A stretch of DNA of 64,000 bases from Malacoraja senta (taxonomy: Eukaryota). This document shows positions 14,896-37,579 of the stretch, piece by piece. Every line of letters begins with the position of its first letter. Within the stretch, counting starts at the first letter, position 1. The translations under genes and the position numbers were made by a program. The notes under the pieces were generated by a model, which saw only the letters and a program-made list of their open reading frames with translations, was not told the origin of the DNA and did not search any database. The DNA is taken from NCBI GenBank assembly GCA_038087875.1, contig CM075983.1, forward strand, positions 49,662,001 through 49,726,000, written 5' to 3'.

Positions 14896-15887
14896 NNNNN
14901 NNNNNNNNNNNNNNNNNNNNNNNNNNNNNNNNNNNNNNNNNNNNNNNNNNNNNNNNNNNNNNNNNNNNNNNNNNNNNNNNNNNNNNNNNNNNNNNNNNNN
15001 NNNNNNNNNNNNNNNNNNNNNNNNNNNNNNNNNNNNNNNNNNNNNNNNNNNNNNNNNNNNNNNNNNNNNNNNNNNNNNNNNNNNNNNNNNNNNNNNNNNN
15101 NNNNNNNNNNNNNNNNNNNNNNNNNNNNNNNNNNNNNNNNNNNNNNNNNNNNNNNNNNNNNNNNNNNNNNNNNNNNNNNNNNNNNNNNNNNNNNNNNNNN
15201 NNNNNNNNNNNNNNNNNNNNNNNNNNNNNNNNNNNNNNNNNNNNNNNNNNNNNNNNNNNNNNNNNNNNNNNNNNNNNNNNNNNNNNNNNNNNNNNNNNNN
15301 NNNNNNNNNNNNNNNNNNNNNNNNNNNNNNNNNNNNNNNNNNNNNNNNNNNNNNNNNNNNNNNNNNNNNNNNNNNNNNNNNNNNNNNNNNNNNNNNNNNN
15401 NNNNNNNNNNNNNNNNNNNNNNNNNNNNNNNNNNNNNNNNNNNNNNNNNNNNNNNNNNNNNNNNNNNNNNNNNNNNNNNNNNNNNNNNNNNNNNNNNNNN
15501 NNNNNNNNNNNNNNNNNNNNNNNNNNNNNNNNNNNNNNNNNNNNNNNNNNNNNNNNNNNNNNNNNNNNNNNNNNNNNNNNNNNNNNNNNNNNNNNNNNNN
15601 NNNNNNNNNNNNNNNNNNNNNNNNNNNNNNNNNNNNNNNNNNNNNNNNNNNNNNNNNNNNNNNNNNNNNNNNNNNNNNNNNNNNNNNNNNNNNNNNNNNN
15701 NNNNNNNNNNNNNNNNNNNNNNNNNNNNNNNNNNNNNNNNNNNNNNNNNNNNNNNNNNNNNNNNNNNNNNNNNNNNNNNNNNNNNNNNNNNNNNNNNNNN
15801 NNNNNNNNNNNNNNNNNNNNNNNNNNNNNNNNNNNNNNNNNNNNNNNNNNNNNNNNNNNNNNNNNNNNNNNNNNNNNNNNNNNNNNN
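14896..15887. other. Assembly gap (992 N)
   Basis: Run of N. Confidence 1.
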
Positions 15888-17023: not shown

Positions 17024-17160
17024 NNNNNNNNNNNNNNNNNNNNNNNNNNNNNNNNNNNNNNNNNNNNNNNNNNNNNNNNNNNNNNNNNNNNNNNNNNNNN
17101 NNNNNNNNNNNNNNNNNNNNNNNNNNNNNNNNNNNNNNNNNNNNNNNNNNNNNNNNNNNN
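17024..17160. other. Assembly gap (137 N)
   Basis: Run of N. Confidence 1.
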
Positions 17161-17834: not shown

Positions 17835-19382
17835 CAGTGCATTCAGAAAGTATTCAGACCCCTTCAATTTTTATACATTTTGTCACGTTACACCCTTTTT
17901 CTAAAACGGATTAAATTCATTTTTTATCATCAATCTACACACAATACCCCATAATGAAAAAGCAAAAACAGGTGTTTAGAAATGTTTGCTTAGTAATTAA
18001 AAAGACATAACATTTACGTAAGTATTCAGACCTTTTACTCAGTACTTTGTTGAGACACCTTTGGCAGCGATTACAGCCACAAGTCTTCTTGGGTAAAGCG
18101 CTACAAGCTTGGCACACCTGTATTTGGGTAATTTCTCCCATTCTTCTCTGCAGATCCTCTCAAGCTCTGTCAGTTTGGATGGGGAGCATCGATGCACAGC
18201 TATTTACAGGTCCCTCCGAAGATGTTCGATCGGGTTCAAGTCCGAGCTCTGGCTGGGCCACTCAGGGACATTCACAGACTTGTCATGAAGCCACTCCTGC
18301 GTTGACGGCTGTGTGCTTAGGGTCATTGTCCTGTTTGAAGGTGAACCTCTGCCCCAGTCTGAGGTCCAGAATGCTCTGGAGCAGGTTTTCATCAAGGATC
18401 TCCCTGTACTTTGCTCCAATCATATTTCCCTCGATCCTGACTAGTCTCCCAGTTCCTGCCACTGAAAAACATCCCCACAGCATGATGCTGCCACCACCTT
18501 GCTTCACCACAGTATGGTATTGGCCAGGTGATGAGCGGTGCCTGGTTTCCTCCAGACGTGATGCTTGGCATTCAGGCCAAAGAGTTCAATCTTGGTTTAA
18601 TCAGACCAGAGAATCTTGTTTCTCATGCCTTTTGGCAAACTCCAAGCGGGCTGTCATGTGCCTTTTACCGAGGAGTGGCTTCCGTCTGGCCACTCTACCA
18701 TAAAGGTCTGATTGGTGGAGTGCTGCAGATATAGTTGTCCTTCTGGAATGTTCTCTTATCTCCACAGAGGAACTCTGGTGCTCTGTCAGAGTGACCAACG
18801 GGTTCTTGGTCACCTCCCTGACTAAGGCCCTTTTCCCCCGATTGCTCAGTTTGGCCGGGAGGCCAACTCTATGAAGAGTCCTGGTGGTTCCAAAGTTCTT
18901 CCATTTAAGAATGATGGAGGCCACTGTGCTCTTCGGGACCTGCAATGCTGCAGAAATTGTTTTATACCCTTCCCCAAATCTGTGTCTCGTCACAATCCTG
19001 TCTCGGAGGTCTACGGACAATTCCTTCGCCTTCTTAAACCTTATATAGACAGGTGGGTGCCTTTCCAAATCATGTCCAATCAATTGAATTTACCACTGGT
19101 GGACTCCAATCAAGTTGTTGAAACATCTCATGGATAATCAATGGAAACAGGATGAACCTAAGCTCAATTTTGAGTGTCATAGCAAAGGGTCTGTAAATGT
19201 GATATTTCAGTTATTTCTTTTTAATTACTTTGTGAAAATTTCTAAACACCGTTTTCACTTCTTCATTCAGGGGTATTGTGTGTAGATTGATGATAAAAAA
19301 ATTGAATTTAATCCATTTTAAAATATGGCTGTAACAAAATGTAGAAAAAGTGAAGGGGTCTGAATACTTTCTGAATGCACTG
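17835..19382 (-). mobile_element. Tc1-family transposon (second family), defective, with internal deletions
   Basis: TA|CAGTGCATTCAGAAAGTATTCAGACCCCTT...GGGGTCTGAATACTTTCTGAATGCACTG|TA. Fragments [41 protein letters not shown] and [14 protein letters not shown] are DD34E transposase motifs. Confidence 0.95.
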
Positions 19383-23693: not shown

Positions 23694-24306
23694 CAAAGAT
23701 CATAGAGCGTAATATATGTATGTGTGTGTGTGTGTGTGTATATATCTATATATATATATCTATATACATATTTATATGTATATTTATAAATATAATTGCC
23801 TTTATGGTTTATGTACATCTTCTGAGAAATAAGATAAATGGAGAAATAGAGCGTTGCTTTAATTCAATGTTGCTTCTGATCCATGAAAAGGAACTTTGAG
23901 ATCTATTTATCTTTATCTTGCCTCTCACACACAGGCACACACACAATCATATATATTATATATATAAATATATATATATGTTAAATTTATGCATAGTGTG
24001 TGTTAACGCAATACAAGGGAAACTGCACAAAGGAGGGGGCTAGGGAGGAAGGAAGGGAGGGAAATGGGCAGAAACAGATAGATTAAGCAGGGGGAAAACA
24101 TTTGAAAAGAAAATTAACTAAAATATGTGAATTGATAGATGAGCTACATCACACACATACTGTTCCCCTAAAACACTGATTACACTGTGAGAGGCATAAC
24201 GGAAGTTGGGTTGAGCATTCCAAGATGGCGGCCGTTAGGCCCGTTACGTACTACACCTCAGTGCATTGGATTACGTGGAGTATCTTGCTCCGCTCTATGA
24301 TCTTTG
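23694..24306. mobile_element. TIR-bounded MITE-like element containing (TG)n/(TA)n microsatellite; superfamily unassigned
   Basis: CAAAGATCATAGAGCG...CGCTCTATGATCTTTG 16-bp inverted ends. The same terminus recurs at ~14303, ~17746 and (duplicated) ~29751. Confidence 0.65.
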
Positions 24307-25720
24307 CTTTTGAGTGGATTTAATCTTTTGGAATCTCTTGTATTATTATTTATTGATTCCAACATTTTTAATTGTTTATATATTTTTATTGTTTCATTTC
24401 AGTGATATCCACAAAGTAAGATTTTTTGTTATAAAACAAAGGGAGAAATTGAAAGGTATTAGAGACATGGGTCTTCTTGTAACCAGATCTTACCATACAT
24501 GTAGGAAAAGCAATTAAGAAGACAAACAATATGCTGGCCTTACTGCAAGGAAGTTTGAGTGCAGGATAAAAGTTGTTGTACTGATGTTTAATCGATAATG
24601 TTTAATATTTTATGTGTCATTCCTGTCACTGTATGTCATGTTGTCACTTGCGGGCGGAGCACCAAGACAAATTCCTTGTATTGAATACTTGGTCAATAAA
24701 CTTATTCATTCAAACTTATTAATTCATTCATTATACAAGGCCTTAGTGAGGCTGGATATATAATATTGTGTTCGAATCTGGTCCTCTGGCATGTGAACTT
24801 GAAATTAATGATGGGCTCCAGTGAAAGTTGTTCACATTGATTATTGCAGATTAATGGCCCTGTCTCACGGTGCGAGTCCACGAGTGATCCCGAGTGAAAG
24901 AAAAAATCAAACTCGTGGTTGTCTACGAGATTCCAAGTTTATGTTCACGAGTTTAAACGAGTTCCCACGTGTATGTCTAAGTTTGCCGTTTACTTCTCAT
25001 TTCTGCGATGTACCAAGTTCCTCTCCTGAGTTACCAAGTTTTTCTCCCGAGTTACTCATCACATGGTAAAAATGATGTCATGCAGTTTTTCTTTACACTA
25101 TAAAAAGACCCAGCCTGAAGAACGATCTCGACCCGAAACATCACCTATTTCTTTTCTCCAGAGATGCTGCCTGACCAGCTGTGTTAGTCCATCATTTTGT
25201 GTCTATCTTTGGTTTAAACTAGTATCTGCAATTCCTTCCTTCAAACTTTTAGAGCAGTTTGTTTCAAGAAACAATCCTTCCAAAATTGCATTCAAAAGTC
25301 CATTTGAACTACATTTGTTCAAGGTCTGACATTAATCATTGAAAGGCATAGGCTGTTTTGTGTCGGGAGGAACTGCAGATGCTGGTTTACACCGAAGATA
25401 GCCACAAAATGCTGGAGTAACTCAGCGGGACATGCAGCATTTCTGGAGTGAAGGACAACCAATATGTATATTTATAAATATAATTGCCTTTATGGTTTAT
25501 GTCCGGTTCAGCGCTGGCCTATAGGTGAGCCAGTCGAGTCCCATCTTCAGACTGAAAAAACGTTTCGACCCTTCTCTCCAGAGATGCTGCCGGCTTGGCT
25601 GAGTTACTCCAGCTTTTTGTGTCTTGTAAGATTGTTTTATTCCCTTATTTTACTTCGGAGTCACGTGAGTGACTACGTGAAGAAGAGCCCGTCCAGCCGC
25701 ACACGCGTCATATCGTCAGA
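23766..25720 (+). repeat. Left copy of a 1,955-bp direct duplication flanking the Hero element
   Basis: Matches 29211-31165 at a constant offset of 5,445. I saw three substitutions (25140/30585, 25518/30963, 25548/30993) and no net indel. Confidence 0.97.
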
Positions 25721-28700
25721 ATCAAATACACAGGACAAGATGTTAAGAAGTCCCTTGTGCCAATAGGTGGGGAGCATTTCACGACATTCGTTGATTGTTG
25801 AGAGTGGTAGACGCTCAACATCGGGGGGGGGGGTAACCTTCAGGACAGTTGGGCACAGGACACATCATCAGTAGTGTACCCTTGCATCACTGGGTGTTTC
25901 GGCCTTTTAACACTATACCCTCAGCGCATGTCCCGTGTCAAACCGTCCCAAAGATTCACCCCGACATACTTGGGGCCCAGCATGGGTCTTTCCGCTTGAG
26001 CCAAATCCACCGGCTGCTTCTTTCAGCCGCCTCTGAGAGTGATCTTATGGTCTTCCGCAGAGCCTGACCGTGGATTCCAAGCTCCTTCAGCAGTCTGATG
26101 GTAGATGACGCAACAAATCCTCTGCATCCCACTTCAACTGGATAGACTTTGGTGTTCCAGCCACGCTGCGTTGCCTCTGCTGCAAGCTCTGCGTAGCGCA
26201 GCTTCTTACGCTCATAGGCCTCCTCAACAGAGTTCTCCCATGGAACTGTGAGCTCTATGATGTAAGCAGTCTTCTGTGAAGGGGACCAGAACACCAAGTC
26301 TGGCCTGAGGGTGGTGGAAGCAATTTCAGGTGGAAAAATTAGTTGTCGGCCGATGTCCGCCAGCATCCTCCAGTCACGGGCCCTGCATTGGCTTCCTTCT
26401 TCTGATCTGGTGGAAGGAAGTTTAGAAGTTTTCTGTCCTTCTCGGACAAAGGTTATTACCCTTAGGGGAGGGTTGCTTGCTCTCGGAGGCAAGGAGTTGG
26501 TCGCACACCGCCTGTTCTCAAGGGCTGATGCCAGGCTTTTTAGTACCTGATTATGCTGCCACGTGTATCTCCCTTGCGTGAGGCTGGTCTTGCAGCCTAC
26601 CATGATGTGTTTGAGGGTCGCTGGAGTTGGGCAGATGGCACAGGTTGGATCCTCGCCGTACCACTGATGGAGGTTCTTTGGTGATGGAAGCACGTCATAT
26701 GTCGCTCTGATGATGAAGCTGATCTTGCTTGCTTCCATTTCCCATAGTTCTTTCCAGCTGATCTTCCTCCGCTCCACACCTTCCCACTGCATCCATTGCC
26801 CCTGCTTGGCAAGAGAGACCGCCTTTGCACTTCTTGCGGCCTCCTCCTGTCGCCGCACCTCCTCAACCACCAACGTCCTCCGCTCTGATGTTGTGGCCTT
26901 TCGCCAAGTTGGTTTACTTGTCGTAAGGCCAAAGCCTCCTCTTCCCTGCTGGACTTGCCCCACTATGTCTTTGTGCCTCAGGGCTGATGAAGCTTGCTGT
27001 ACTGCATCAGATGGTGTCCACTTCCGGCCAGTTGCTAGGGGCGGCGCAACAGCACTGATGATCTTGTCTCTAGAGTCCCTCAGTGTCATCTGGAGTCTTA
27101 CTTTAGAACACTTATATTCCTCTGTTAGACTAGTGAGAGGTAGTTCCAGGACCCCTTTGCCATAGAGGCCGATGTTAGTTAGACATCGTGGGACACCGAG
27201 CCATTTCTTCACGTATGAAGTTATGGTTCGCTCCATCTTCTCCACAGTTGTTATTGGGGCTTCATAAACGGTCAGTGGCCACATTGTCCGAGGAACGAGT
27301 CCAAACTGTAGGCACCAGAGCTTCAGTTTCCCAGGCAGTAGGGTCTGATTGATGTTCTCCAGTCCATTGACAATTTCTTGCCTTAGTTGTTGCACCTGCT
27401 CTTTGTCCTTGAGACTTGCGTTATACCATCTTCCCAGGCTTTTAACTGGCTGCTCAGACACTGTTGGTATTGGGTCGTCACCAATACAGAACCTTGTGTC
27501 TCTAAGCACCCCCTTGACTATGGAGATGCTTCGAGATTTACTTGGTTTGATTTTCATTCGGGCCCACTTGATGTTCTCCTGCAGCTTTCCAAGTAGCCGC
27601 TTGGTGCATGCTGCAGTAGTGGTTAGTGTTGTCATGTCATCCATGTATGCCCTGATGGGTGGCAGACGGAGCCCAGCCCTGGTTCGTTCACCGCCCACCA
27701 CCCATTTTGAGGCCCTGATGATGACTTCCATGGCCATTGTAAAGGCCAAGGGTGAGACTGTGCAGCCTGCCATGATGCCTACTTCCAAGCGCTGCCATGT
27801 TGTACTGAAGTCAGCTGTTGTGAAGCACAGCTGCAGGTCTTGGTAATATTTCTTGACCAGTGTGGTGATGAGCTCTGGTACATGGAAAAAGGCAAAAGAT
27901 TCCCAAAGGAGTTCATGGGGAACTGAACCAAATGCATTGGCCAGATCGAGGAAGATCACATGTAGGTCTCTCTTGTCCTTCTTAGCTGCTTGGATCTGGT
28001 GCCAGATCATGCTTGTATGCTCCAAGCAACCCGAAAATCCTGGAATTCCTGCTTTCTGTACAGATGTATCAATGTACTTGTTTGTTACCAGATAGGTGGA
28101 CAGCCTTTGTGATACAATGCTAAAAAAGATTTTTCCCTCGACGTTGTGGAGACATATTGGCCGGAATTGGCTGATGTCTGACGAATCCTTTTCTTTAGGT
28201 ATTAGCACGCCGCCGGCCCTTCGCCAAGCCTTAGGTATTGTTTGCTTCTTCCACACCACCCTCATGAGCTTCCATAGAAAGCGTAACACATCTGGTGCGT
28301 TCTTATAGAGCTTGTATGGTACTCCGTTTGGCCCCGGAGCTGAAGCTGCTCTTGCTCGCCGGACCGTGTTCTCCACCTCTTTCCATCTCGGAGGGCTGGT
28401 GTCCATGTTGAATTCAGGTGGTTGAATAGGCGGGATGTCATGTGGGATGACCAACTGCTCATGCCTTTTCGTGTCTTTGTGGGCCTTTTCCAGGTGTTCC
28501 TCCAATTCCTGTTTTGATGTTTTCAAAGTTCCACTTTTTTCCTTTGCGAAGAGGTCTTTGATGAACTTGAAAGGGTCTTTATAGAACCGTGTTCTTGTGT
28601 GTTCTTTCTTCTTGCGAAGTTTCCTCAAGTTCTCTGCTTTTCGCAAGGTTGCCAATCGGTTCTTGATGTCCTCTTGGAGTAGCATGAGACCTTCTCTCTC

Positions 28701-29210
28701 TGCGTCAGTTGCTTTTTTCCATTGCTTTTTCAACTGTCTCCTCTCTCTGATTAGCCTCTCGATCTCCTGCTGCCTCCTGGACTTGATTGGTGTTGGTAAT
28801 TTCTTTCCACCTCTCCCTTTACTCACCCCAAACCGTTCTTCTCCATAGCTGTAGATTGTGTTGCCCATCCTTTCAAGCTTTTCCACTGCTGTGCCCGTTT
28901 GTTGCTCCAAGATATGTATAAGGTCACTGTTGACCGTCTCCCACTCTTTCTTTTCAACAGCCTTGGGCCATTTCACTCCAGGTTTGTGCCCTTTGATCTT
29001 TCCCTCCAATGGAGGTCTTTGTAGTTGTTGCGTGGGCTCCTCCACCGGCATTTCTGTGCTTGTATCACCCTCTTCAGTGACATGGGTGCTGATGCTCTGC
29101 GAACTTTGGTTTGTGTCCCGTCGCTGTGCTTCACTCGACTGATTTGACTGGTTGCTTCGTAAGAAGTACTGGTCAATGCGAGGCCCATGTTTCTGCTCTC
29201 TCAAGCAGAA
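25721..29210 (-). mobile_element. Hero-clade (R2 superfamily) non-LTR retrotransposon, 5'-truncated, 3,490 bp
   Basis: Boundaries are defined by the flanking duplication. Single RT-RLE ORF plus ~235-nt 3' UTR, no poly(A) tail. Confidence 0.9.
25956..29204 (-). CDS. Reverse transcriptase - CCHC zinc knuckle - PD-(D/E)xK restriction-like endonuclease polyprotein (1082 aa open frame, N-terminus missing; the frame is called from a TTG)
   Basis: RT motifs SAPGPNG, FRPI, QKAG, FLDLANAFGSVPH, GIMAGCTVSPLAF, AYMDD, KSLG; knuckle CAIC..TLKHIMVGC; endonuclease RPDLV...IIELTVPWE...ERKKLRY..VEVGCRG. The GIMAGC/YMDD/ELTVPWE pattern is typical of Hero elements. Confidence 0.95.
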   Translation of the reverse strand: MREQKHGPRIDQYFLRSNQSNQSSEAQRRDTNQSSQSISTHVTEEGDTSTEMPVEEPTQQLQRPPLEGKIKGHKPGVKWPKAVEKKEWETVNSDLIHILEQQTGTAVEKLERMGNTIYSYGEERFGVSKGRGGKKLPTPIKSRRQQEIERLIRERRQLKKQWKKATDAEREGLMLLQEDIKNRLATLRKAENLRKLRKKKEHTRTRFYKDPFKFIKDLFAKEKSGTLKTSKQELEEHLEKAHKDTKRHEQLVIPHDIPPIQPPEFNMDTSPPRWKEVENTVRRARAASAPGPNGVPYKLYKNAPDVLRFLWKLMRVVWKKQTIPKAWRRAGGVLIPKEKDSSDISQFRPICLHNVEGKIFFSIVSQRLSTYLVTNKYIDTSVQKAGIPGFSGCLEHTSMIWHQIQAAKKDKRDLHVIFLDLANAFGSVPHELLWESFAFFHVPELITTLVKKYYQDLQLCFTTADFSTTWQRLEVGIMAGCTVSPLAFTMAMEVIIRASKWVVGGERTRAGLRLPPIRAYMDDMTTLTTTAACTKRLLGKLQENIKWARMKIKPSKSRSISIVKGVLRDTRFCIGDDPIPTVSEQPVKSLGRWYNASLKDKEQVQQLRQEIVNGLENINQTLLPGKLKLWCLQFGLVPRTMWPLTVYEAPITTVEKMERTITSYVKKWLGVPRCLTNIGLYGKGVLELPLTSLTEEYKCSKVRLQMTLRDSRDKIISAVAPPLATGRKWTPSDAVQQASSALRHKDIVGQVQQGRGGFGLTTSKPTWRKATTSERRTLVVEEVRRQEEAARSAKAVSLAKQGQWMQWEGVERRKISWKELWEMEASKISFIIRATYDVLPSPKNLHQWYGEDPTCAICPTPATLKHIMVGCKTSLTQGRYTWQHNQVLKSLASALENRRCATNSLPPRASNPPLRVITFVREGQKTSKLPSTRSEEGSQCRARDWRMLADIGRQLIFPPEIASTTLRPDLVFWSPSQKTAYIIELTVPWENSVEEAYERKKLRYAELAAEATQRGWNTKVYPVEVGCRGFVASSTIRLLKELGIHGQALRKTIRSLSEAAERSSRWIWLKRKDPCWAPSMSG

Positions 29211-31165
29211 ACATATTTATATGTATATTTATAAATATAATTGCCTTTATGGTTTATGTACATCTTCTGAGAAATAAGATAAATGGAGAAATAGAGCGTT
29301 GCTTTAATTCAATGTTGCTTCTGATCCATGAAAAGGAACTTTGAGATCTATTTATCTTTATCTTGCCTCTCACACACAGGCACACACACAATCATATATA
29401 TTATATATATAAATATATATATATGTTAAATTTATGCATAGTGTGTGTTAACGCAATACAAGGGAAACTGCACAAAGGAGGGGGCTAGGGAGGAAGGAAG
29501 GGAGGGAAATGGGCAGAAACAGATAGATTAAGCAGGGGGAAAACATTTGAAAAGAAAATTAACTAAAATATGTGAATTGATAGATGAGCTACATCACACA
29601 CATACTGTTCCCCTAAAACACTGATTACACTGTGAGAGGCATAACGGAAGTTGGGTTGAGCATTCCAAGATGGCGGCCGTTAGGCCCGTTACGTACTACA
29701 CCTCAGTGCATTGGATTACGTGGAGTATCTTGCTCCGCTCTATGATCTTTGCTTTTGAGTGGATTTAATCTTTTGGAATCTCTTGTATTATTATTTATTG
29801 ATTCCAACATTTTTAATTGTTTATATATTTTTATTGTTTCATTTCAGTGATATCCACAAAGTAAGATTTTTTGTTATAAAACAAAGGGAGAAATTGAAAG
29901 GTATTAGAGACATGGGTCTTCTTGTAACCAGATCTTACCATACATGTAGGAAAAGCAATTAAGAAGACAAACAATATGCTGGCCTTACTGCAAGGAAGTT
30001 TGAGTGCAGGATAAAAGTTGTTGTACTGATGTTTAATCGATAATGTTTAATATTTTATGTGTCATTCCTGTCACTGTATGTCATGTTGTCACTTGCGGGC
30101 GGAGCACCAAGACAAATTCCTTGTATTGAATACTTGGTCAATAAACTTATTCATTCAAACTTATTAATTCATTCATTATACAAGGCCTTAGTGAGGCTGG
30201 ATATATAATATTGTGTTCGAATCTGGTCCTCTGGCATGTGAACTTGAAATTAATGATGGGCTCCAGTGAAAGTTGTTCACATTGATTATTGCAGATTAAT
30301 GGCCCTGTCTCACGGTGCGAGTCCACGAGTGATCCCGAGTGAAAGAAAAAATCAAACTCGTGGTTGTCTACGAGATTCCAAGTTTATGTTCACGAGTTTA
30401 AACGAGTTCCCACGTGTATGTCTAAGTTTGCCGTTTACTTCTCATTTCTGCGATGTACCAAGTTCCTCTCCTGAGTTACCAAGTTTTTCTCCCGAGTTAC
30501 TCATCACATGGTAAAAATGATGTCATGCAGTTTTTCTTTACACTATAAAAAGACCCAGCCTGAAGAACGATCTCGACCCGAAACGTCACCTATTTCTTTT
30601 CTCCAGAGATGCTGCCTGACCAGCTGTGTTAGTCCATCATTTTGTGTCTATCTTTGGTTTAAACTAGTATCTGCAATTCCTTCCTTCAAACTTTTAGAGC
30701 AGTTTGTTTCAAGAAACAATCCTTCCAAAATTGCATTCAAAAGTCCATTTGAACTACATTTGTTCAAGGTCTGACATTAATCATTGAAAGGCATAGGCTG
30801 TTTTGTGTCGGGAGGAACTGCAGATGCTGGTTTACACCGAAGATAGCCACAAAATGCTGGAGTAACTCAGCGGGACATGCAGCATTTCTGGAGTGAAGGA
30901 CAACCAATATGTATATTTATAAATATAATTGCCTTTATGGTTTATGTCCGGTTCAGCGCTGGTCTATAGGTGAGCCAGTCGAGTCCCATCTTGAGACTGA
31001 AAAAACGTTTCGACCCTTCTCTCCAGAGATGCTGCCGGCTTGGCTGAGTTACTCCAGCTTTTTGTGTCTTGTAAGATTGTTTTATTCCCTTATTTTACTT
31101 CGGAGTCACGTGAGTGACTACGTGAAGAAGAGCCCGTCCAGCCGCACACGCGTCATATCGTCAGA
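29211..31165 (+). repeat. Right copy of the 1,955-bp direct duplication
   Basis: As above; this copy continues into the uninterrupted DIRS element. Confidence 0.97.
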
Positions 31166-31529
31166 TGCTTAGCGTAGTGCCGATGTGTTTGGAGTGAGCA
31201 GAGCTCCTCCAAACCGGTAAGAAAAAAGCCTGAAGGTAAATCTTTACTTATGTTTTTCAGGTCGATTTCTTCAGAGGACTTGTAGTTGGGAAAACACAAG
31301 TCAGAATGAAGAAAGGATTTAGAGGTGTACCGCAGGTAACGCAAGAGGTCTGCGAGTAGCGAGCGCCCTTTTTAATTTTTAAAAAACGGTTTCAAATATT
31401 TACCGTTGTAGCGCTATTAGAGTGCATGAGAAATAGGCCGTGTGGCCAGTAGACTGAAAGTCAGACCAGAGGATCCCGATTCAGGCAGATAGTTAGCTAT
31501 ATTTAGAACCGCGTTGCGAGGCAGCGCAG

Positions 31530-32030
31530 TGAATGCCTGGGGAATGTCCAGGCTTAGCGTTGGCCCATAGGAGAGCCAGCGTATGAAGTGCCTGGGGAAG
31601 GTCCAGCTTAGCGTTGTCTCTACAGGAGCCAACGCAGGGAGTACCTGGTGGAGGTCCAGGTTTAGCGTTGGTCTATAGGAGAGCCAGTGCATGGAGTGCT
31701 TTAGAAGGTCCGGCTCAGCCTTGGCCTAAGGGAGAGCCAGCGTAGGGAGTACTTGGGAAAGTCCGGTTCAGCGCTGGCCTACAGGTGAGCCAGTGTGAGC
31801 AATGCCTGGTTAAAAGCATTTTTTATGCGTTGGTCTACAGGAGAGCCAGTGCCAACTATGTCTGGAGAGAACAGTTTAAGCGTTGGCCTACAGGTGAGCC
31901 AGCGCCAGCAGCACCTGAAAGAGGGTTGCCTATGCATGGGCCTACAGGAGAGCCCGCACGGCGAGCACCTGGAAAAGTGTTTACTGTGCGTAGGCCTATG
32001 GGAGAGCCAGCGCTAGATACACCTGAAACA
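31530..32030 (+). repeat. Degenerate ~60-bp tandem repeat in the 5' part of the DIRS element
   Basis: Recurrent ggtccagcttagcgttggcctataggagagccagcg-like unit, about 8 copies. Confidence 0.8.
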
Positions 32031-33737
32031 GGATGTCAATTCGCCCCTCCATGAGGATTATTTCATACATAGATTCAGTAAACAAATCATATGAGGACTC
32101 GAGCCCAATAACAGAGCCCAAAGGACCAGAATTGACACAATATATCAAAGTTGTGGTTCCAAAAATATCAGGGGAACCATTGGGAGATAAATTAACTATG
32201 TCAATAAAATACTTACTCTCCCAACAGCTCCAAGGTTCTAACCATGTATGTGCTGTCTACAAATATGAAACCCACAGTATTGAGCATTATAAGCAGTCTC
32301 AGCGGGGATAGGGTGTTGAAATTACTGGTCAGGCATTACGGCTTTTTGACCAAAGGTTGGATGGAGAGCATGTGTATATATCACAACAAGGTTGAATTAG
32401 CACTCATGTGTAGTGCGCACTTTGAAATAAACTGTATTTATAAAAGTGCTATAAGACCTGTTATATACCCTAAGTTTGTGGGCTCTGTACACCATCTAAT
32501 ATTTAAATTGCCTAATAATCTGTTTTAGAAAGAATCTAGCCAAAAAAGGAATGATCCTGTGTGATTGGCAGATCAAATTAAAGGCAGTTTTCCCAACCAA
32601 TATGTGGTGACTGGGGATAGTGAAGGATCAAATTGGTCTTTCCCATATGTGCGTTGTAGGCGCAGTCCTCCTGAGGTATGTGGAGGCTACAATATTCCAC
32701 TAAGATCAGGGGATAACAATTGCCATAGGCAAACCCTGAGGTAGGAGGTCTGGTTCTGTAAGAAACATATTAAATGTTTTACATTTACAAGTTGGAAAAG
32801 ATTACAATTCTTGCTAAAAGAATAGTAATTTGATATATTTATACTGTACAGTATTGTGGGGTTTAGAATTTAATTCTACCCATATTTGGTTTCTCCTACT
32901 ACGGTATTTGAAACACAGTTATTGATTATTTGGGTTCCATTATTAAATGAGAACACATGATTGTGATTCTGCCCAAGGATTAAGGCTGCATTTAATTGGA
33001 AGTTATATTAAGCTCATTACAGAGCACCAATCCTCAATTAGGCAAGAAGCAAGCCTGCTTTGCAAACTATTGCTTATTTCCAGCTGTAGAATTTAGACTG
33101 CTGAATTATCAGCATTTACAGTAAGCATGGATAGAGGAATGGAGAATACAATTTAGGGCAATTTTGCCAGGCCATGTATTTGCCAGTTGCAGTTATTACT
33201 GGAATATTATAATGAATCATGAGTATCTCAAATGCCTCCAGAGAGATTCTGGTTGAACACCTTCCATTATGCTACACACTAATTGTAGTGCTCTAAGTTC
33301 AGGTCATACTTATAAGTATTTCCAGCTGTGGAGGTACATGGAATGTGGAGAAAGTACCTTTGATCCAATAACAAGGGATCATTAATGAGAGTTTTAGGAA
33401 CATTTTATGGCCTAAAGCTTATTGCTCTAATATGCAAAGTTTGCATGTTTAGGTATAGATTGACAAAACTACGGAATAGAACGTATGTTAATCATTCGAG
33501 TGGTATGAGTCAGAATCTTGTAAAGTCTGGCTAACGTGATCTGGACCTGGTGTTTAACAGAAATATTTGGTTGGCAATCTATCTACGAGGTAGATTCAAT
33601 ATAGTTGCAGATTCAAGGTCATGTAATTCAATGATAATACAGAATGGATGTTGGATCGTGACAAATTTAATAATATTGTTGCACGATTGATGACTTGTTT
33701 GCAATCCAGACTTAACCACCAATTACCTAAATATGTG

Positions 33738-34534
33738 TTAAAGAAGGAACTGCAGATGCTGGAAAATCGAAGGTACACAAAAATGCTGGAGAAACTCAGC
33801 GGGTGCAGCAGCATCTATGGAGCGAAGGAAATAGGTAACGTTTCGGGCCGAAACCCTTCTTCAGACTGATAGGGGGTGGGGAGAAGAAAGGAAAAAAGGA
33901 AAAAGGCGGAGGAGGAGCCCGAGGGCTGGGGGGGGGGGGGGGGGAGGAGACAACCAGATGGCTGATGAAGGGAGGGGACAGCAAGGGCTAGCAGAATTGG
34001 GAGAATTCAATGTTCAAGCCCCCAGGATGTAGACTGCCCAAGCGGAATATGAGGTGCATTTCCTCCAATTTACGGTGTTGCTCGCTGTGGCCATGGAGGA
34101 GACCCAGGACAGAGAGGTCAGATACGGAATGGGAGGGGGAGTTGAAGTGCTGAGCCACCGGGAGTTCAGGTTGGTTATTGCGGACCGACCGGAGGTGTTC
34201 GGCGAAACGATCGCCAAGCCTCCGCTTGGTCTCACCGATGTAGATCAGCTGGCATCCAGAGCAGCGAATGCATCTACATCCTGGGGGCTTGAACATTGAA
34301 TTCTCCCAATTCTGCTAGCCCTTGCTGTCCCCTCCCCTTCATCAGCCATCTAGTTGTCTCCTCCCCCCCCCCCCCCCAGCCCTCGGGCTCCTCCTCCGCC
34401 TTTTTCCTTTTTTCCTTTCTTCTCCCCACCCCCTATCAGTCTGAAGAAGGGTTTCGGCCCGAAACGTTACCTATTTCCTTCGCTCCATAGATGCTGCTGC
34501 ACCCGCTGAGTTTCTCCAGCATTTTTGTGTACCT
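33738..34534 (-). mobile_element. Penelope-like element 3' fragment (GIY-YIG endonuclease plus pseudo-LTR) with an inverted partial copy, inserted in the DIRS element
   Basis: ORF 33988-34296: CIRCSGCQLIYIGETKRRLGDRFAEH...HFNSPSH...EEMHLIFRLGSLHPGGLN. Arms 33771-34033 and 34273-34534 are inverted copies. tacctaaatat flanks both sides (33724-33734, 34530-34540). Confidence 0.9.
34441..34470 (+). ncRNA. Minimal hammerhead-ribozyme motif in a Penelope-like pseudo-LTR (mirror copy on minus strand at 33837-33864)
   Basis: CUGAAGA-A-GGGU-UUCG-GCCC-GAAAC-GUU: hammerhead core, UUCG-capped stem II and loopless palindromic stem III (ACGU). Stem I is weak. Confidence 0.6.
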
Positions 34535-35974: not shown

Positions 35975-36087
35975 TCTTCACGTAGTCACTCACGTGACTC
36001 CGAAGTAAAATAGTAAGATTAAACGAGAACTTACCAGTTTGAAGTTTGATCTTTATTTTATGAGGAGTTACAATGAGGGATTACGTG
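35975..36087 (+). other. DIRS internal complementary region (ICR)
   Basis: The first 38 nt are the exact reverse complement of 31091-31128. The remainder is the reverse complement of 36231-36303 with one substitution and a 2-nt indel. Confidence 0.92.
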
Positions 36088-37579
36088 CCCACCGCTCCCA
36101 CCCTCATAAAAGATCGAGCTGGTAGTTCTAGTCTTTATATATCTTACTATCATACTTCAGTAATTGTTGTCTGTGATTTCACTCCGCTGCTTTGAAGATT
36201 GACGCGTATGCGGCTGGACGGGCTCTTCTTCACGTAATCCCTCATCGTAACTCCTCATAAAATAAAGATCAAACTTCAAACTGGTAAGCTCGTTTAATCT
36301 TACTAATTTATCTCTCATCAAAACGTTGGTAAACCTCTAACAAAAAGATTAGGTAAATTGAACATTAACGTTATTTTTTCCCTCGACAGCAAGGTCCATA
36401 GACCAGAGGGATAGCAGTGTGTGTCTCTCTACTCACCCAGTATGTCCGTCAGAGCAGCCGTCCCACCGTCGCGACTTAAACTGTATAAAAAGCAACGGCT
36501 CAAAACATTGCTGATTGGGCAGATCTGCCCAGAAACCACCCCTTTCACCACACCCCAGCCCTGGGAAACAAAGTTTTCAGAGCCCTACAGTCACCCCAGC
36601 CCGCCCGCGAACCTCTGAATGAAAGACAAAGCTCAAACTCTGCACCGAGGTCAGGATCGAACCCGGGTCTCTGGTGCTGCCAGGATGATTAAAAAATATC
36701 AATTAAAAGAATTGAAAGCAAAAGCTACTGATGATAAATTTTTATCAGTTAATAAACCGCAAAAGCAACTTGAGAATGTTTAATTGATAAAAGATTTCCT
36801 GTCTGAATTGGTTTAAATCTGGTATTTTTACGCATCTTTGGTATGTGCATAATGAGGTATGGAAGGGACAGCTCTGACCTTTAGTCGCTCTTGTTATGCA
36901 CTCAACATGCACGACTATTTGGTTGTTTTTTAATCTTTATCCTGAGATAGGAGAAATAAACAAAAAGATCGCGATTGACATGCTGTGAGTCGTCATTTAT
37001 CCATGCAGAAATTCTCACGCGGTTAATATAATTGTTAGCGGACGCTTTTTAAATCCTTCTTCCCCATTTCGTCACAATAACCATTTTAATTTTGCGCATT
37101 GTTATTCTTGTTACCCTGGATAAAAGATATTTATCCCATAAATAAGAACCAATAATAGTGAGGCGCTTGCTTCAGATTCTGCTGTTCCTCTGATTCTCTC
37201 TCCTGTCCTCCTCTCTCTCTCCCTTCTCCCCCTCCCTCTCCCCATGGGCAATCACTACCAAAGTGTCTGCCCACACAGTCAGTACACCTATCATACACTT
37301 GTCTCCCGTACTAAGTCACCCCAACTCCCTCCACTCCCCTCCCCTCCTCCCCCTACCACCTTTCCCTCCCAACTCCAGTCCCGACCCCCTGGGAAACTGA
37401 AGGGAGCGACAATCAACTGGCACGGATACAAATGTCATACACAAGAAAGGGCAGATGCTGGTTGACAAAAAGTGAACACAGTGCTGGAGTAACACAAAGA
37501 CGCAGCAGAATTTTGGAAACGTCATCCCGTCACCCATTCCTTCTCTCCAGAGATGCTACCTGTCCCGCTGAGTTAAAGA

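What the first reader, a model, noticed from the sequence alone, without database searches (positions are those of the whole stretch)
23766..31165. Young Hero (R2-superfamily) retrotransposon flanked by a 1,955-bp 'giant target-site duplication'
Seen: the layout is A(23766-25720) - Hero(25721-29210, minus) - A(29211-31165). Both element ends sit exactly at the duplication breakpoints, and the two A copies differ at only 3 positions that I could see. Established: TSDs from target-primed reverse transcription are usually a few to a few tens of bp. Inference: the plus strand was nicked at 25720 and primed cDNA synthesis. The truncated cDNA 3' end then annealed ~1.95 kb upstream in a TA-rich microsatellite and was extended back through the nick site. 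This would be retrotransposition-coupled kilobase tandem duplication, able to duplicate an exon or enhancer. A simple merge of filled and empty haplotypes would give A-Hero-B...A-B, not A-Hero-A-B.
Basis: partly seen in the sequence, partly recalled or inferred. Interest (0 to 1): 0.85.

Follow-up and report, generated by a model that had tools for sequence, protein, structure and literature searches.

The report
Jumping gene flanked by 2-kb duplication
A young, 5'-truncated R2-type (Hero-like) jumping gene sits between two almost identical 1,955-base copies of its target DNA, which looks like a real insertion that duplicated 2 kb of host DNA, an outcome already known for human L1 elements; I could not confirm it with sequencing reads.

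Summary
Window 23766-25720 (A1) and 29211-31165 (A2) align without gaps and differ by 3 substitutions. Between them lies one minus-strand non-LTR retrotransposon. It has an RT domain and a C-terminal CCHC plus restriction-like endonuclease (RLE) domain whose predicted fold best matches R2.

Three refinements:
- The element is 5'-truncated. It lacks about 100 N-terminal residues, including a zinc finger and the start codon.
- Homology to the family stops at 29207, so 29208-29210 (GAA) is filler.
- The 3' end is the family's true terminus and shares AGA with the target.

The seven bases after the element end (GAAACAT) are exactly what snap-back copying of the cDNA end would give. Their last four (ACAT) overlap A's first bases. 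This match has P about 5e-4 under random abutment.

My best reading (about 0.62) is a single event: target-primed reverse transcription at the A|B site, resolved 1.95 kb upstream, giving a tandem duplication ("giant TSD"). Assembly error (about 0.15) is not excluded.

Kilobase TSDs are already documented for L1, and a 126-bp TSD for the RLE element R9, so this is a new member of a known kind. No exon was found in A. Unchecked scan notes report similar LINE-flanking duplications elsewhere in this genome.

The parts
23707..23765 (.). (TG)n/(TA)n-rich low-complexity tract immediately left of A1. The upstream breakpoint lies at its right edge.
   Evidence: Sequence read. Weak sub-threshold Rfam hairpin-type hits (mir-297 47 bits against a gathering score of 90). 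Its DNA fold is no better than shuffles (z 0.14).
23766..25720 (+). A1, the first copy of the 1,955-bp duplicated target segment.
   Evidence: Ungapped match to 29211-31165 with 3 mismatches. It contains SINE/MITE-like repeats at about 25111-25266, 25357-25455 and 25570-25624. No Pfam domain was found in the ORFs tested.
25462..25534 (+). 73-nt templated patch inside A, also present in A2 at 30907-30979. 41 nt are identical to 23774-23814 and 34 nt are about 97% identical to minisatellite unit 31761-31794. It sits in the loop of an inverted-repeat MITE.
   Evidence: (D6, I5). It is present in both A copies, so it predates the duplication.
25718..25720 (.). AGA, a 3-nt microhomology shared by the target 3'-OH and the element's 3' tail (...TGATTCT in element sense).
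   Evidence: Homology to L001 runs to 25718. Flanks of other family copies in runs X17 and X25 diverge at 25716-25719. A2 also ends in AGA.
25721..25955 (-). 3' UTR of the element, running up to its canonical 3' terminus.
   Evidence: 71% nucleotide match to the 3' UTR of L001. No Rfam family at E<=0.1.
25956..29207 (-). Open reading frame of the RLE-type non-LTR retrotransposon. RT lies at about 27435-28202 and the CCHC plus RLE domain within 25959-26720. The frame is intact but 5'-truncated inside the N-terminal zinc finger.
   Evidence: ORF, RVT_1, R2 best in the PDB. (relatives have about 100 extra N-terminal residues). (invariant C27, C30, H38, C43, R139-P140-D141, E156, K172). (the C-terminal model best matches R2Tg and R2Bm, E 4.6e-8).
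29208..29210 (.). GAA, a 3-nt filler at the 5' junction. It comes neither from the element nor from the sequence left of A1.
   Evidence: L001 has CCC here and 23763-23765 is TAT.
29187..29214 (+). 11-bp inverted repeat (29187-29197 / 29204-29214) spanning the 5' junction. Snap-back of the cDNA end AGCA on TGCT would template GAAACAT.
   Evidence: 7/7 match, P about 4.8e-4 for random 7-mers of the window; first 3 nt alone P 0.12. The 4-bp stem alone is weak (-1.5 kcal/mol, not better than shuffles).
29211..31165 (+). A2, the second copy of the duplicated segment. Its first 4 nt (ACAT) are the microhomology with the snap-back product.
31160..31171 (.). Intact A|B junction (31165|31166), which shows the state of the target before insertion.
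   Evidence: A-right plus the start of B belongs to a multicopy sequence.

Best explanation
The structure is one real retrotransposition event that also made a 1,955-bp tandem duplication of the target, a 'giant target-site duplication'.

Shown:
- An RLE-type (R2-superfamily, Hero-like) element lies on the minus strand.
- Its complete 3' terminus is joined to the end of A with 3 nt of primer/template overlap.
- Its 5' end is truncated inside the N-terminal zinc finger.
- That 5' end is joined, through 3 filler bases and 4 bases of microhomology, to a point 1,955 bp upstream of the priming site, at the edge of a TA-rich tract.
- The A|B junction survives intact on the far side.

Inferred sequence of events:
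1. The plus strand was nicked, or was already open, after 25720, and its 3'-OH primed reverse transcription of the element RNA.
2. cDNA synthesis stopped early at 29207.
3. The cDNA 3' end folded back on a 4-nt self-complement and was extended by about 7 nt (GAAACAT).
4. Its ACAT end annealed to a single-stranded or broken minus-strand end 1.95 kb upstream.
5. Fill-in of both long overhangs duplicated A.

The sequence cannot say how the upstream end arose. It could have been a distant second-strand nick, a break at the TA-rich tract, a sister-chromatid or replication-fork intermediate, or break-induced replication. The inserted copy lacks its start codon and N-terminal DNA-binding finger, so it is not autonomous.
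For: - The duplication is exact and gap-free, with 3 substitutions.
- The 3' junction falls at the family's true 3' end. Homology to L001 ends at 25718, and flanks of other copies in runs X17 and X25 diverge at 25716-25719 with unrelated sequences. This points to RNA-templated TPRT and not to a DNA-level template switch.
- At the 5' junction, homology stops at 29207 and is followed by GAA+ACAT. That equals the snap-back prediction 7/7 (P about 5e-4).
- 5' truncation fits TPRT. So does the 3'-to-5' decline in family depth.
- The ages agree. The A copies differ at 0.15%. The element differs from the majority of the family's contigs in runs X15 and X16 at about 7 of 3,490 positions. Each A copy carries at least one derived change.
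- There is no gap within 6.6 kb and no other long near-identical direct repeat in the window.
- Published precedent exists. L1 TSDs above 100 bp occur in up to 10% of HeLa events and in most events in NER-deficient cells (PMC5223499). 1-10 kb tandem duplications with L1 at the junction are 'regarded as large TSDs' (bioRxiv 10.1101/2024.12.14.628481). An L1-bridged tandem duplication has been confirmed in a tumour (PMC7058536).
Against: - No read-level support was obtained.
- The 0.15% difference between A1 and A2 is also what two haplotypes would show.
- All 3 differences lie in the right-hand 30% of A.
- The snap-back stem is only 4 bp and is not thermodynamically notable.
- The TA-rich tract does not fold better than shuffles.
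- A 2-kb stagger has not, to my knowledge, been reported for an RLE-type element.
Confidence: 0.62

Rival explanations
1. Assembly artefact. The individual is heterozygous for an ordinary insertion (Y-A-Hero-B on one haplotype, Y-A-B on the other), and pieces of the filled and empty haplotypes were laid in series, making a false A-Hero-A-B.
For: - A1 and A2 differ at 0.15%, a typical heterozygosity.
- A2 starts in a low-complexity tract and the element is a very high-copy repeat; both are places where assemblies break.
- The assembly contains sized gaps (992 and 137 N).
- The junction could not be checked in reads.
- Unchecked scan notes list several other LINEs flanked by 0.1-2.5 kb duplications in this genome. 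These could reflect a systematic error.
Against: - There is no N run at or near either copy. The nearest ends 6.6 kb away.
- The artefact needs a contig to end exactly at the element's truncation point plus 3 filler bases, and then to abut A-left without any overlap.
- The 7 bases after the element end match a snap-back template, P about 5e-4 under random abutment.
- The other noted duplications go down to about 112-500 bp. That size range is not expected from haplotype merging (unchecked leads).
Confidence: 0.15
2. A real rearrangement, but not one TPRT event with a distant second break. One route is an ordinary insertion followed by a second rearrangement. Another is replication-based template switching (MMBIR/FoSTeS type) that copied a DNA copy of the element into a tandem-duplication junction.
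For: - The locus already carries a 73-nt templated patch copied from 1.7 kb upstream and 0.8 kb downstream. So template-switch repair has acted here before, with a breakpoint 8 bp from the edge of A.
- Filler and microhomology at the 5' junction are also hallmarks of such repair.
Against: - The insert starts exactly at the element's canonical 3' terminus. A switch into a DNA copy would start at an arbitrary point or carry flank sequence.
- Two-step routes need a precise restoration of the A|B junction.
- The 3'- and 5'-transduction routes I worked through by reasoning need the RNA end and the insertion site to coincide.
Confidence: 0.1
3. The element inserted, without TSD or deletion, exactly into the junction of an older A-A tandem duplication.
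For: The geometry allows it. The 5' filler and the 3' microhomology would look the same.
Against: - It requires the insertion to hit one particular phosphodiester bond.
- Flanks of other family copies are diverse, so there is no sign of specificity for this sequence.
- The divergence between the A copies (0.15%) is no older than the element's own divergence (about 0.2%).
Confidence: 0.03

Closest known systems
Large target-site duplications and small tandem duplications made by human LINE-1 (HeLa and NER-deficient cells, PMC5223499; experimental clones and cancers, bioRxiv 10.1101/2024.12.14.628481; PCAWG, PMC7058536)
   Same: - A LINE lies at the junction of a direct tandem duplication.
- The 3' junction is a TPRT junction.
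- The duplication is read as a TSD whose second break lies far from the first.
- Sizes of 0.1-10 kb are reported.
- Proposed causes include distal nicks, sister-chromatid bridging and break-induced replication.
   Different: - Those are APE-endonuclease L1 elements with poly(A) tails, in somatic or cultured human cells.
- This is an RLE-type element without poly(A), fixed or segregating in the germline of a non-mammal.
- This case has a snap-back-type filler at the 5' junction.
R9 rDNA-specific RLE retrotransposons of bdelloid rotifers, with an 'exceptionally long' TSD (Gladyshev & Arkhipova 2009, cited in PMC7650587; the 126-bp figure is from my memory)
   Same: An R2-superfamily element with a restriction-like endonuclease whose second-strand cut lies far from the first, giving an unusually long TSD.
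   Different: In R9 the long TSD is a fixed, site-specific property of every copy and is about 15 times shorter. Here it is a one-off 1,955-bp case in a family that is not site-specific.
R2 target-primed reverse transcription and template jumping (solved structures 9dou, 9nl3, 8gh6; the biochemistry of end-to-end template jumping and non-templated additions is recalled from the Eickbush and Christensen laboratories' work)
   Same: The protein has the same RT and the same C-terminal CCHC/RLE fold. The 3' end is primed on a nicked target. Extra bases and microhomology occur at the 5' junction.
   Different: - R2 is specific for 28S rDNA and its two cuts are a few bp apart.
- This element is only 15-19% identical to R2 in the C-terminal domain.
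- This family inserts at varied sites.
False duplications in genome assemblies (haplotype and gap-edge duplications; recalled from Ko et al. 2022, Genome Biology, not read here)
   Same: Two near-identical neighbouring copies that differ at about the level of heterozygosity.
   Different: Such artefacts usually sit next to gaps or contig ends. Here there is no gap, and the junction carries a templated filler.

Membership tests
RLE-type (R2-superfamily) non-LTR retrotransposon | Reverse transcriptase domain of the non-LTR type | tested here: met
   Pfam RVT_1 E 1.3e-22 at residues 337-592. The best solved relatives are R2 proteins, E 5e-25.
RLE-type (R2-superfamily) non-LTR retrotransposon | C-terminal CCHC zinc knuckle followed by a PD-(D/E)XK restriction-like endonuclease | tested here: met
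   C27, C30, H38, C43, R139-P140-D141, E156 and K172 are invariant in 30 homologues down to 42% identity. The AlphaFold model (pLDDT 77) best matches R2Tg and R2Bm over about 253 columns (E 4.6e-8, probability 1.0), followed by PD-(D/E)XK cap-snatching nucleases. Sequence alone did not find it in the PDB.
RLE-type (R2-superfamily) non-LTR retrotransposon | N-terminal zinc-finger DNA-binding region | tested here: not met
   It is absent from this copy because of 5' truncation. It is present in full-length relatives P0003, P0004, P0007 and P0008. This is a feature of the copy, not of the family.
Hero clade | RT phylogeny groups it with reference HERO elements (HERO-1_SP, HERO-1_BF, HEROTn) | not testable with these tools
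   No named HERO reference sequence was available. Relatives occur in teleosts, lamprey, lancelets and scallops. This fits the known range of Hero (sea urchin, lancelet, fish; PMC9004415) but is not a test.
Hero clade | Mostly not target-specific (PMC4640811) | tested here: inconclusive
   3' flanks of other copies in runs X17 and X25 differ from each other (consensus agreement 0.54-0.73). Only a few flanks were seen, and none came from the window's own genome.
TPRT insertion with target-site duplication | Complete element 3' end at one junction, variable 5' truncation at the other | tested here: met
TPRT insertion with target-site duplication | Direct repeat of target sequence abutting both ends, with an unbroken target on the far side | tested here: met
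   A1 and A2 abut the element, with a 3-nt filler at the 5' side. A2|B is continuous.
TPRT insertion with target-site duplication | The structure exists on single DNA molecules, and an empty allele has one A | tested here: inconclusive
The second masked 29203-29244, and its contigs are about 100 nt long. Exact-protein look-ups and a metagenome scan of the junction found nothing.
Assembly false duplication | Copies lie next to a gap or contig end | tested here: not met
   The only N runs are 14896-15887 and 17024-17160.
Assembly false duplication | Each copy has half the normal read depth, and the differences behave as alleles | not testable with these tools

The most novel reading that the evidence does not exclude
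Kilobase-scale TSDs may be a recurrent, host-level feature of this genome and not a one-off. Unchecked first-stage notes report a Hero with a TSD of about 112 bp. They also report L1 elements flanked by direct duplications of about 285 bp, 378 bp, 502 bp, 1.2 kb and 2.48 kb, one of which copies an immunoglobulin V-J gene. If these are real, two unrelated endonuclease types (APE and RLE) give the same long-tailed TSD distribution. That would point to the host's handling of the TPRT intermediate, for example weak flap or second-nick control like that seen in NER-deficient human cells. LINE insertion would then be a regular source of kilobase tandem duplications in this lineage.
Probability: 0.2. 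Interest if true: 0.75.

Novelty: new member of a known kind. Interest (0 to 1): 0.45.

Why it matters
If real, this is a germline, nucleotide-resolved example of a restriction-like-endonuclease LINE leaving a 2-kb tandem duplication, as L1 does. That would mean the outcome depends on how the host resolves the TPRT intermediate and not on the element's endonuclease. It would also show a route by which LINE activity creates kilobase tandem duplications, the raw material for exon or gene duplication. In this case the duplicated segment holds no recognisable coding sequence. The 5' junction records the order of events (truncation, snap-back filler, microhomology annealing), which is rarely this legible. 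Its value is limited because kilobase TSDs are already published for L1 and because the structure still needs read-level confirmation.

Tried and rejected
- **Read support.** The second (25680-29380) ran, but the tool skipped 29203-29244 as repeat, and all four runs were Logan contigs of about 100 nt. The junction could be neither confirmed nor denied.
- **Run search.** No run holds more than about half of the locus words. More than 10 coded organisms hold the element part only. Runs X17 and X25 share about 1% fixed differences from this copy. I read that as related species and not as horizontal transfer.
- **Exact-protein look-ups.** I looked up the element ORF and three small ORFs spanning the junctions. 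None is on record.
- **Metagenome scan.** An exact 40-nt junction pattern gave no match in metagenome contigs.
- **Structure-prone breakpoint.** The TA-rich tract and the 4-bp snap-back stem do not fold better than shuffles. I dropped 'cruciform hotspot' as evidence.
- **Rfam.** Only sub-threshold microsatellite-type miRNA hits appeared, and no ribozyme in the 3' UTR.
- **Transduction.** By reasoning, 3'- or 5'-transduction of A by a read-through transcript needs a source that already has the Hero|A-left junction, or needs the RNA end and the insertion site to coincide. Rejected.
- **Unequal exchange between the two 41-nt repeats inside A.** This would duplicate 1,688 bp without the element. 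Rejected.
- **Site specificity.** A-right/B is multicopy, but flanks of other element copies are diverse. Not supported.
- **Coding content of A.** No Pfam hit.
- **TSD of the relative in L001.** No clear TSD was found next to its ends.

Full report
**1. Observation**

A fixed offset of 5445 aligns window 23766-25720 (A1) with 29211-31165 (A2). The alignment has no gaps and 3 mismatches, and identity on both sides is random. A self-comparison of the whole window finds only one other long near-identical repeat, an unrelated palindrome at 33771-34534.

The three differences are:
- 25140 A/G. A2 keeps a CpG here.
- 25518 C/T. A1 keeps the base of the local source sequence at 31778.
- 25548 C/G.

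Each copy therefore carries at least one derived change. The window's only N runs are 14896-15887 and 17024-17160, so no gap touches the structure.

**2. The insert**

The segment 25721-29210 has one long open frame on the minus strand, from the 29210 boundary to a stop at 25956.

- It carries Pfam RVT_1 (E 1.3e-22). Its best solved relatives are R2 proteins, ahead of L1 ORF2p.
- The C-terminal 254 residues contain columns that are invariant in 30 homologues down to 42% identity: C27, C30, H38, C43, R139-P140-D141, E156, K172. This is the CCHC plus PD-(D/E)XK pattern.
- A model of that domain (pLDDT 77) best matches the R2Tg and R2Bm structures over about 253 columns (E 4.6e-8). PD-(D/E)XK cap-snatching nucleases come next.

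So this is a restriction-like-endonuclease LINE of the R2 superfamily. The closest proteins on record are 85% identical or less. They come from teleosts, lamprey, lancelets and scallops. This fits the published range of the Hero clade (PMC9004415; PMC4640811), but I had no named Hero reference, so the clade label is untested.

**3. Ends of the element**

*5' end.* Full-length relatives (1173-1182 aa) have about 100 more N-terminal residues, including a CxCGW...HQGKxxC finger. The window copy begins inside that motif. It is therefore 5'-truncated, lacks its start codon, and cannot be autonomous even though its frame is open.

*Extent of homology.* Nucleotide homology to a full-length relative (L001, an NCBI contig) runs from 29207 to 25969 and from 25923 to 25718.

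*3' end.* Both elements end in ...TGATTCT. In the window the last TCT (AGA on the plus strand, 25718-25720) is also the end of A, since A2 ends in AGA too. Contigs of other family copies in runs X17 and X25 leave the alignment at 25716-25719 with unrelated flanks. The 3' junction is thus the family's true terminus, primed on the target with 3 nt of overlap. That is what target-primed reverse transcription gives. It is not what a DNA-level template switch into a resident copy would give.

*5' junction.* The relative reads GGG before the TGC codon, while the window reads TTC. So 29208-29210 (GAA on the plus strand) is neither element sequence nor the sequence left of A1, which is TAT.

**4. The 5' junction in detail**

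The plus-strand cDNA would end ...TGCTCTCTCAAGCA at 29207. Its last 4 nt are complementary to TGCT at 29194-29197. Extension from that snap-back would add GAAACAT. The observed next seven bases are GAAACAT, and their last four (ACAT) are also the first four bases of A (23766-23769 in A1).

Among seven possible 3-nt snap-back sites in the last 150 nt, one gives the 7/7 match. Random 7-mers from the window do so with P about 4.8e-4. The 3-nt filler alone has P 0.12. The 4-bp stem is weak and not better than shuffles, so this is a polymerase-scale event and not a stable hairpin.

I read the junction as truncation, a short templated filler, then microhomology annealing. This confirms the earlier scan note s1-175083. 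Random abutment of two assembly pieces would not produce it.

**5. Mechanism**

The simplest history is one event:
1. The plus strand is open after 25720 and primes cDNA synthesis.
2. The cDNA stops at 29207 and acquires the filler.
3. It anneals by ACAT to a minus-strand end 1,955 bp upstream, at the right edge of a (TG)n/(TA)n tract.
4. Filling both long overhangs gives Y-A-element-A-B, with A|B intact, as observed.

The priming step and the order of events at the 5' junction are inferred from sequence. The source of the upstream end cannot be decided here. It could be a distant second nick, a break in the TA-rich tract, a sister-chromatid or fork intermediate, or break-induced replication.

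I found no structural propensity in the tract (z 0.14). The same spot has, however, been used before. A 73-nt patch inside A (25462-25534, present in both copies) consists of 41 nt identical to 23774-23814 (8 bp from the edge of A) and 34 nt from minisatellite unit 31761-31794. It is inserted in the loop of an inverted-repeat MITE. Template-switch repair therefore acted at this locus before the duplication.

**6. Age**

The A copies differ at 0.15%. The element differs from the majority of the family's contigs in the two best-matching runs (X15 and X16, organism F) at about 7 of 3,490 positions. Both figures indicate a young event and are mutually compatible. The 0.15% is also a normal heterozygosity, so it does not separate the real reading from the artefact reading.

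**7. Could it be an assembly error?**

I could not test this directly.
- The other skipped 29203-29244 as repeat and offered only contigs of about 100 nt.
- Exact-protein look-ups and a junction scan found nothing.

Arguments against an artefact:
- No gap lies nearby.
- An artefact needs a contig to end exactly at the element's truncation point plus filler.
- The two pieces share no overlap that could justify a join.
- The junction carries the templated-filler signature.

Arguments for an artefact:
- The divergence is haplotype-like.
- Both breakpoints lie in repeat or low-complexity sequence.
- The assembly has sized gaps.

I put an artefact at about 0.15.

**8. Other routes considered**

- 3' or 5' transduction of A needs a source that already has the junction to be explained, or needs the RNA end and the target site to coincide.
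- Insertion into the junction of an older A-A tandem needs a hit on a single bond (about 0.03).
- Two-step histories need a precise restoration of A|B.
- Template switching into a DNA copy is disfavoured by the exact 3' terminus.

Together the natural alternatives get about 0.13.

**9. Comparison with what is known**

- L1 TSDs above 100 bp occur in up to 10% of HeLa events and in 57-91% of events in NER-deficient cells. The authors of that study already note that such TSDs can duplicate exons (PMC5223499).
- PCAWG confirmed an L1-bridged tandem duplication and proposed invasion of a sister-chromatid break (PMC7058536).
- Among RLE elements, rotifer R9 makes an exceptionally long TSD (Gladyshev & Arkhipova 2009, cited in PMC7650587).

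The phenomenon is therefore known. What is new is the element type (an RLE, Hero-like LINE), the germline setting and the size relative to R9.

**10. Leads from the scan (unchecked)**

Notes on other pieces of the same genome report a Hero with a TSD of about 112 bp. They also report L1s flanked by duplications of 285 bp, 378 bp, 502 bp, 1.2 kb and 2.48 kb. I could not read those loci. If real, they suggest a host-level tendency. If artefacts, they suggest a systematic assembly problem. This is the most interesting open question, and the genome-wide survey listed under next steps would settle it.

**11. Verdict**

It is probably a real retrotransposition-coupled 2-kb tandem duplication (0.62), not verified physically and not a new mechanism.
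- No exon or protein domain was found in the duplicated segment.
- Interest is 0.45.
- Novelty: new member of a known kind.

Noticed in passing
window 33771-34534: Near-perfect palindrome. The arms are about 268 nt at 98-100% identity, with a spacer of about 235 nt and long G/C runs inside the arms. It could be a natural inverted duplication of a SINE-like repeat or a long-read hairpin artefact.
   Followed up: no
window 25462-25534 and 30907-30979: 73-nt templated patch in the loop of an inverted-repeat MITE. 41 nt are identical to 23774-23814 and 34 nt are about 97% identical to minisatellite unit 31761-31794. It is present in both A copies, so it is older than the duplication. One source boundary lies 8 bp from the duplication breakpoint.
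   Followed up: partly
window 31551-32031: Minisatellite of eight units of about 53 nt (60-80% identity) just downstream of the duplicated segment.
   Followed up: no
window 25645-25720 + 31166-31200; also 36193-36265 and 35975-36012 (minus strand): The sequence spanning the insertion site (A-right plus the start of B) is multicopy. There are partial copies elsewhere in the window and 7-11 variant contigs in runs X15 and X16. B starts with what looks like a short exon ending in a GTAAG donor. The nature of this repeat is unknown.
   Followed up: partly
L001 5744-5869 and 9827-9952; ENA contig of P0001: A full-length relative starts with a 126-nt copy of its own 3' tail (99% identical). Another relative's contig carries head-to-tail arrays of 1080-aa ORFs every 3,981 nt. 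Terminal repeats or tandem arrays therefore seem to be a family trait. Earlier scan notes place hammerhead-like motifs in this tail.
   Followed up: partly
window 25721-25955 (minus strand): The element's 3' UTR contains CUGAUGA and GAAAC on the element strand. Rfam finds no hammerhead or other family at E<=0.1.
   Followed up: partly
window 25721-29207: The element family is extremely abundant, with summed contig depth of 10^3-10^5. It is near-identical in more than 10 coded organisms. Two of these runs (X17 and X25, organisms G and C) share the same fixed differences from this copy, about 1%. Depth falls from the 3' to the 5' end, as expected for 5'-truncated LINE copies.
   Followed up: partly
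window 18601-19080 (minus strand): Fragment of a Tc1/mariner transposase (Sleeping Beauty-type HTH, E 9e-26).
   Followed up: no
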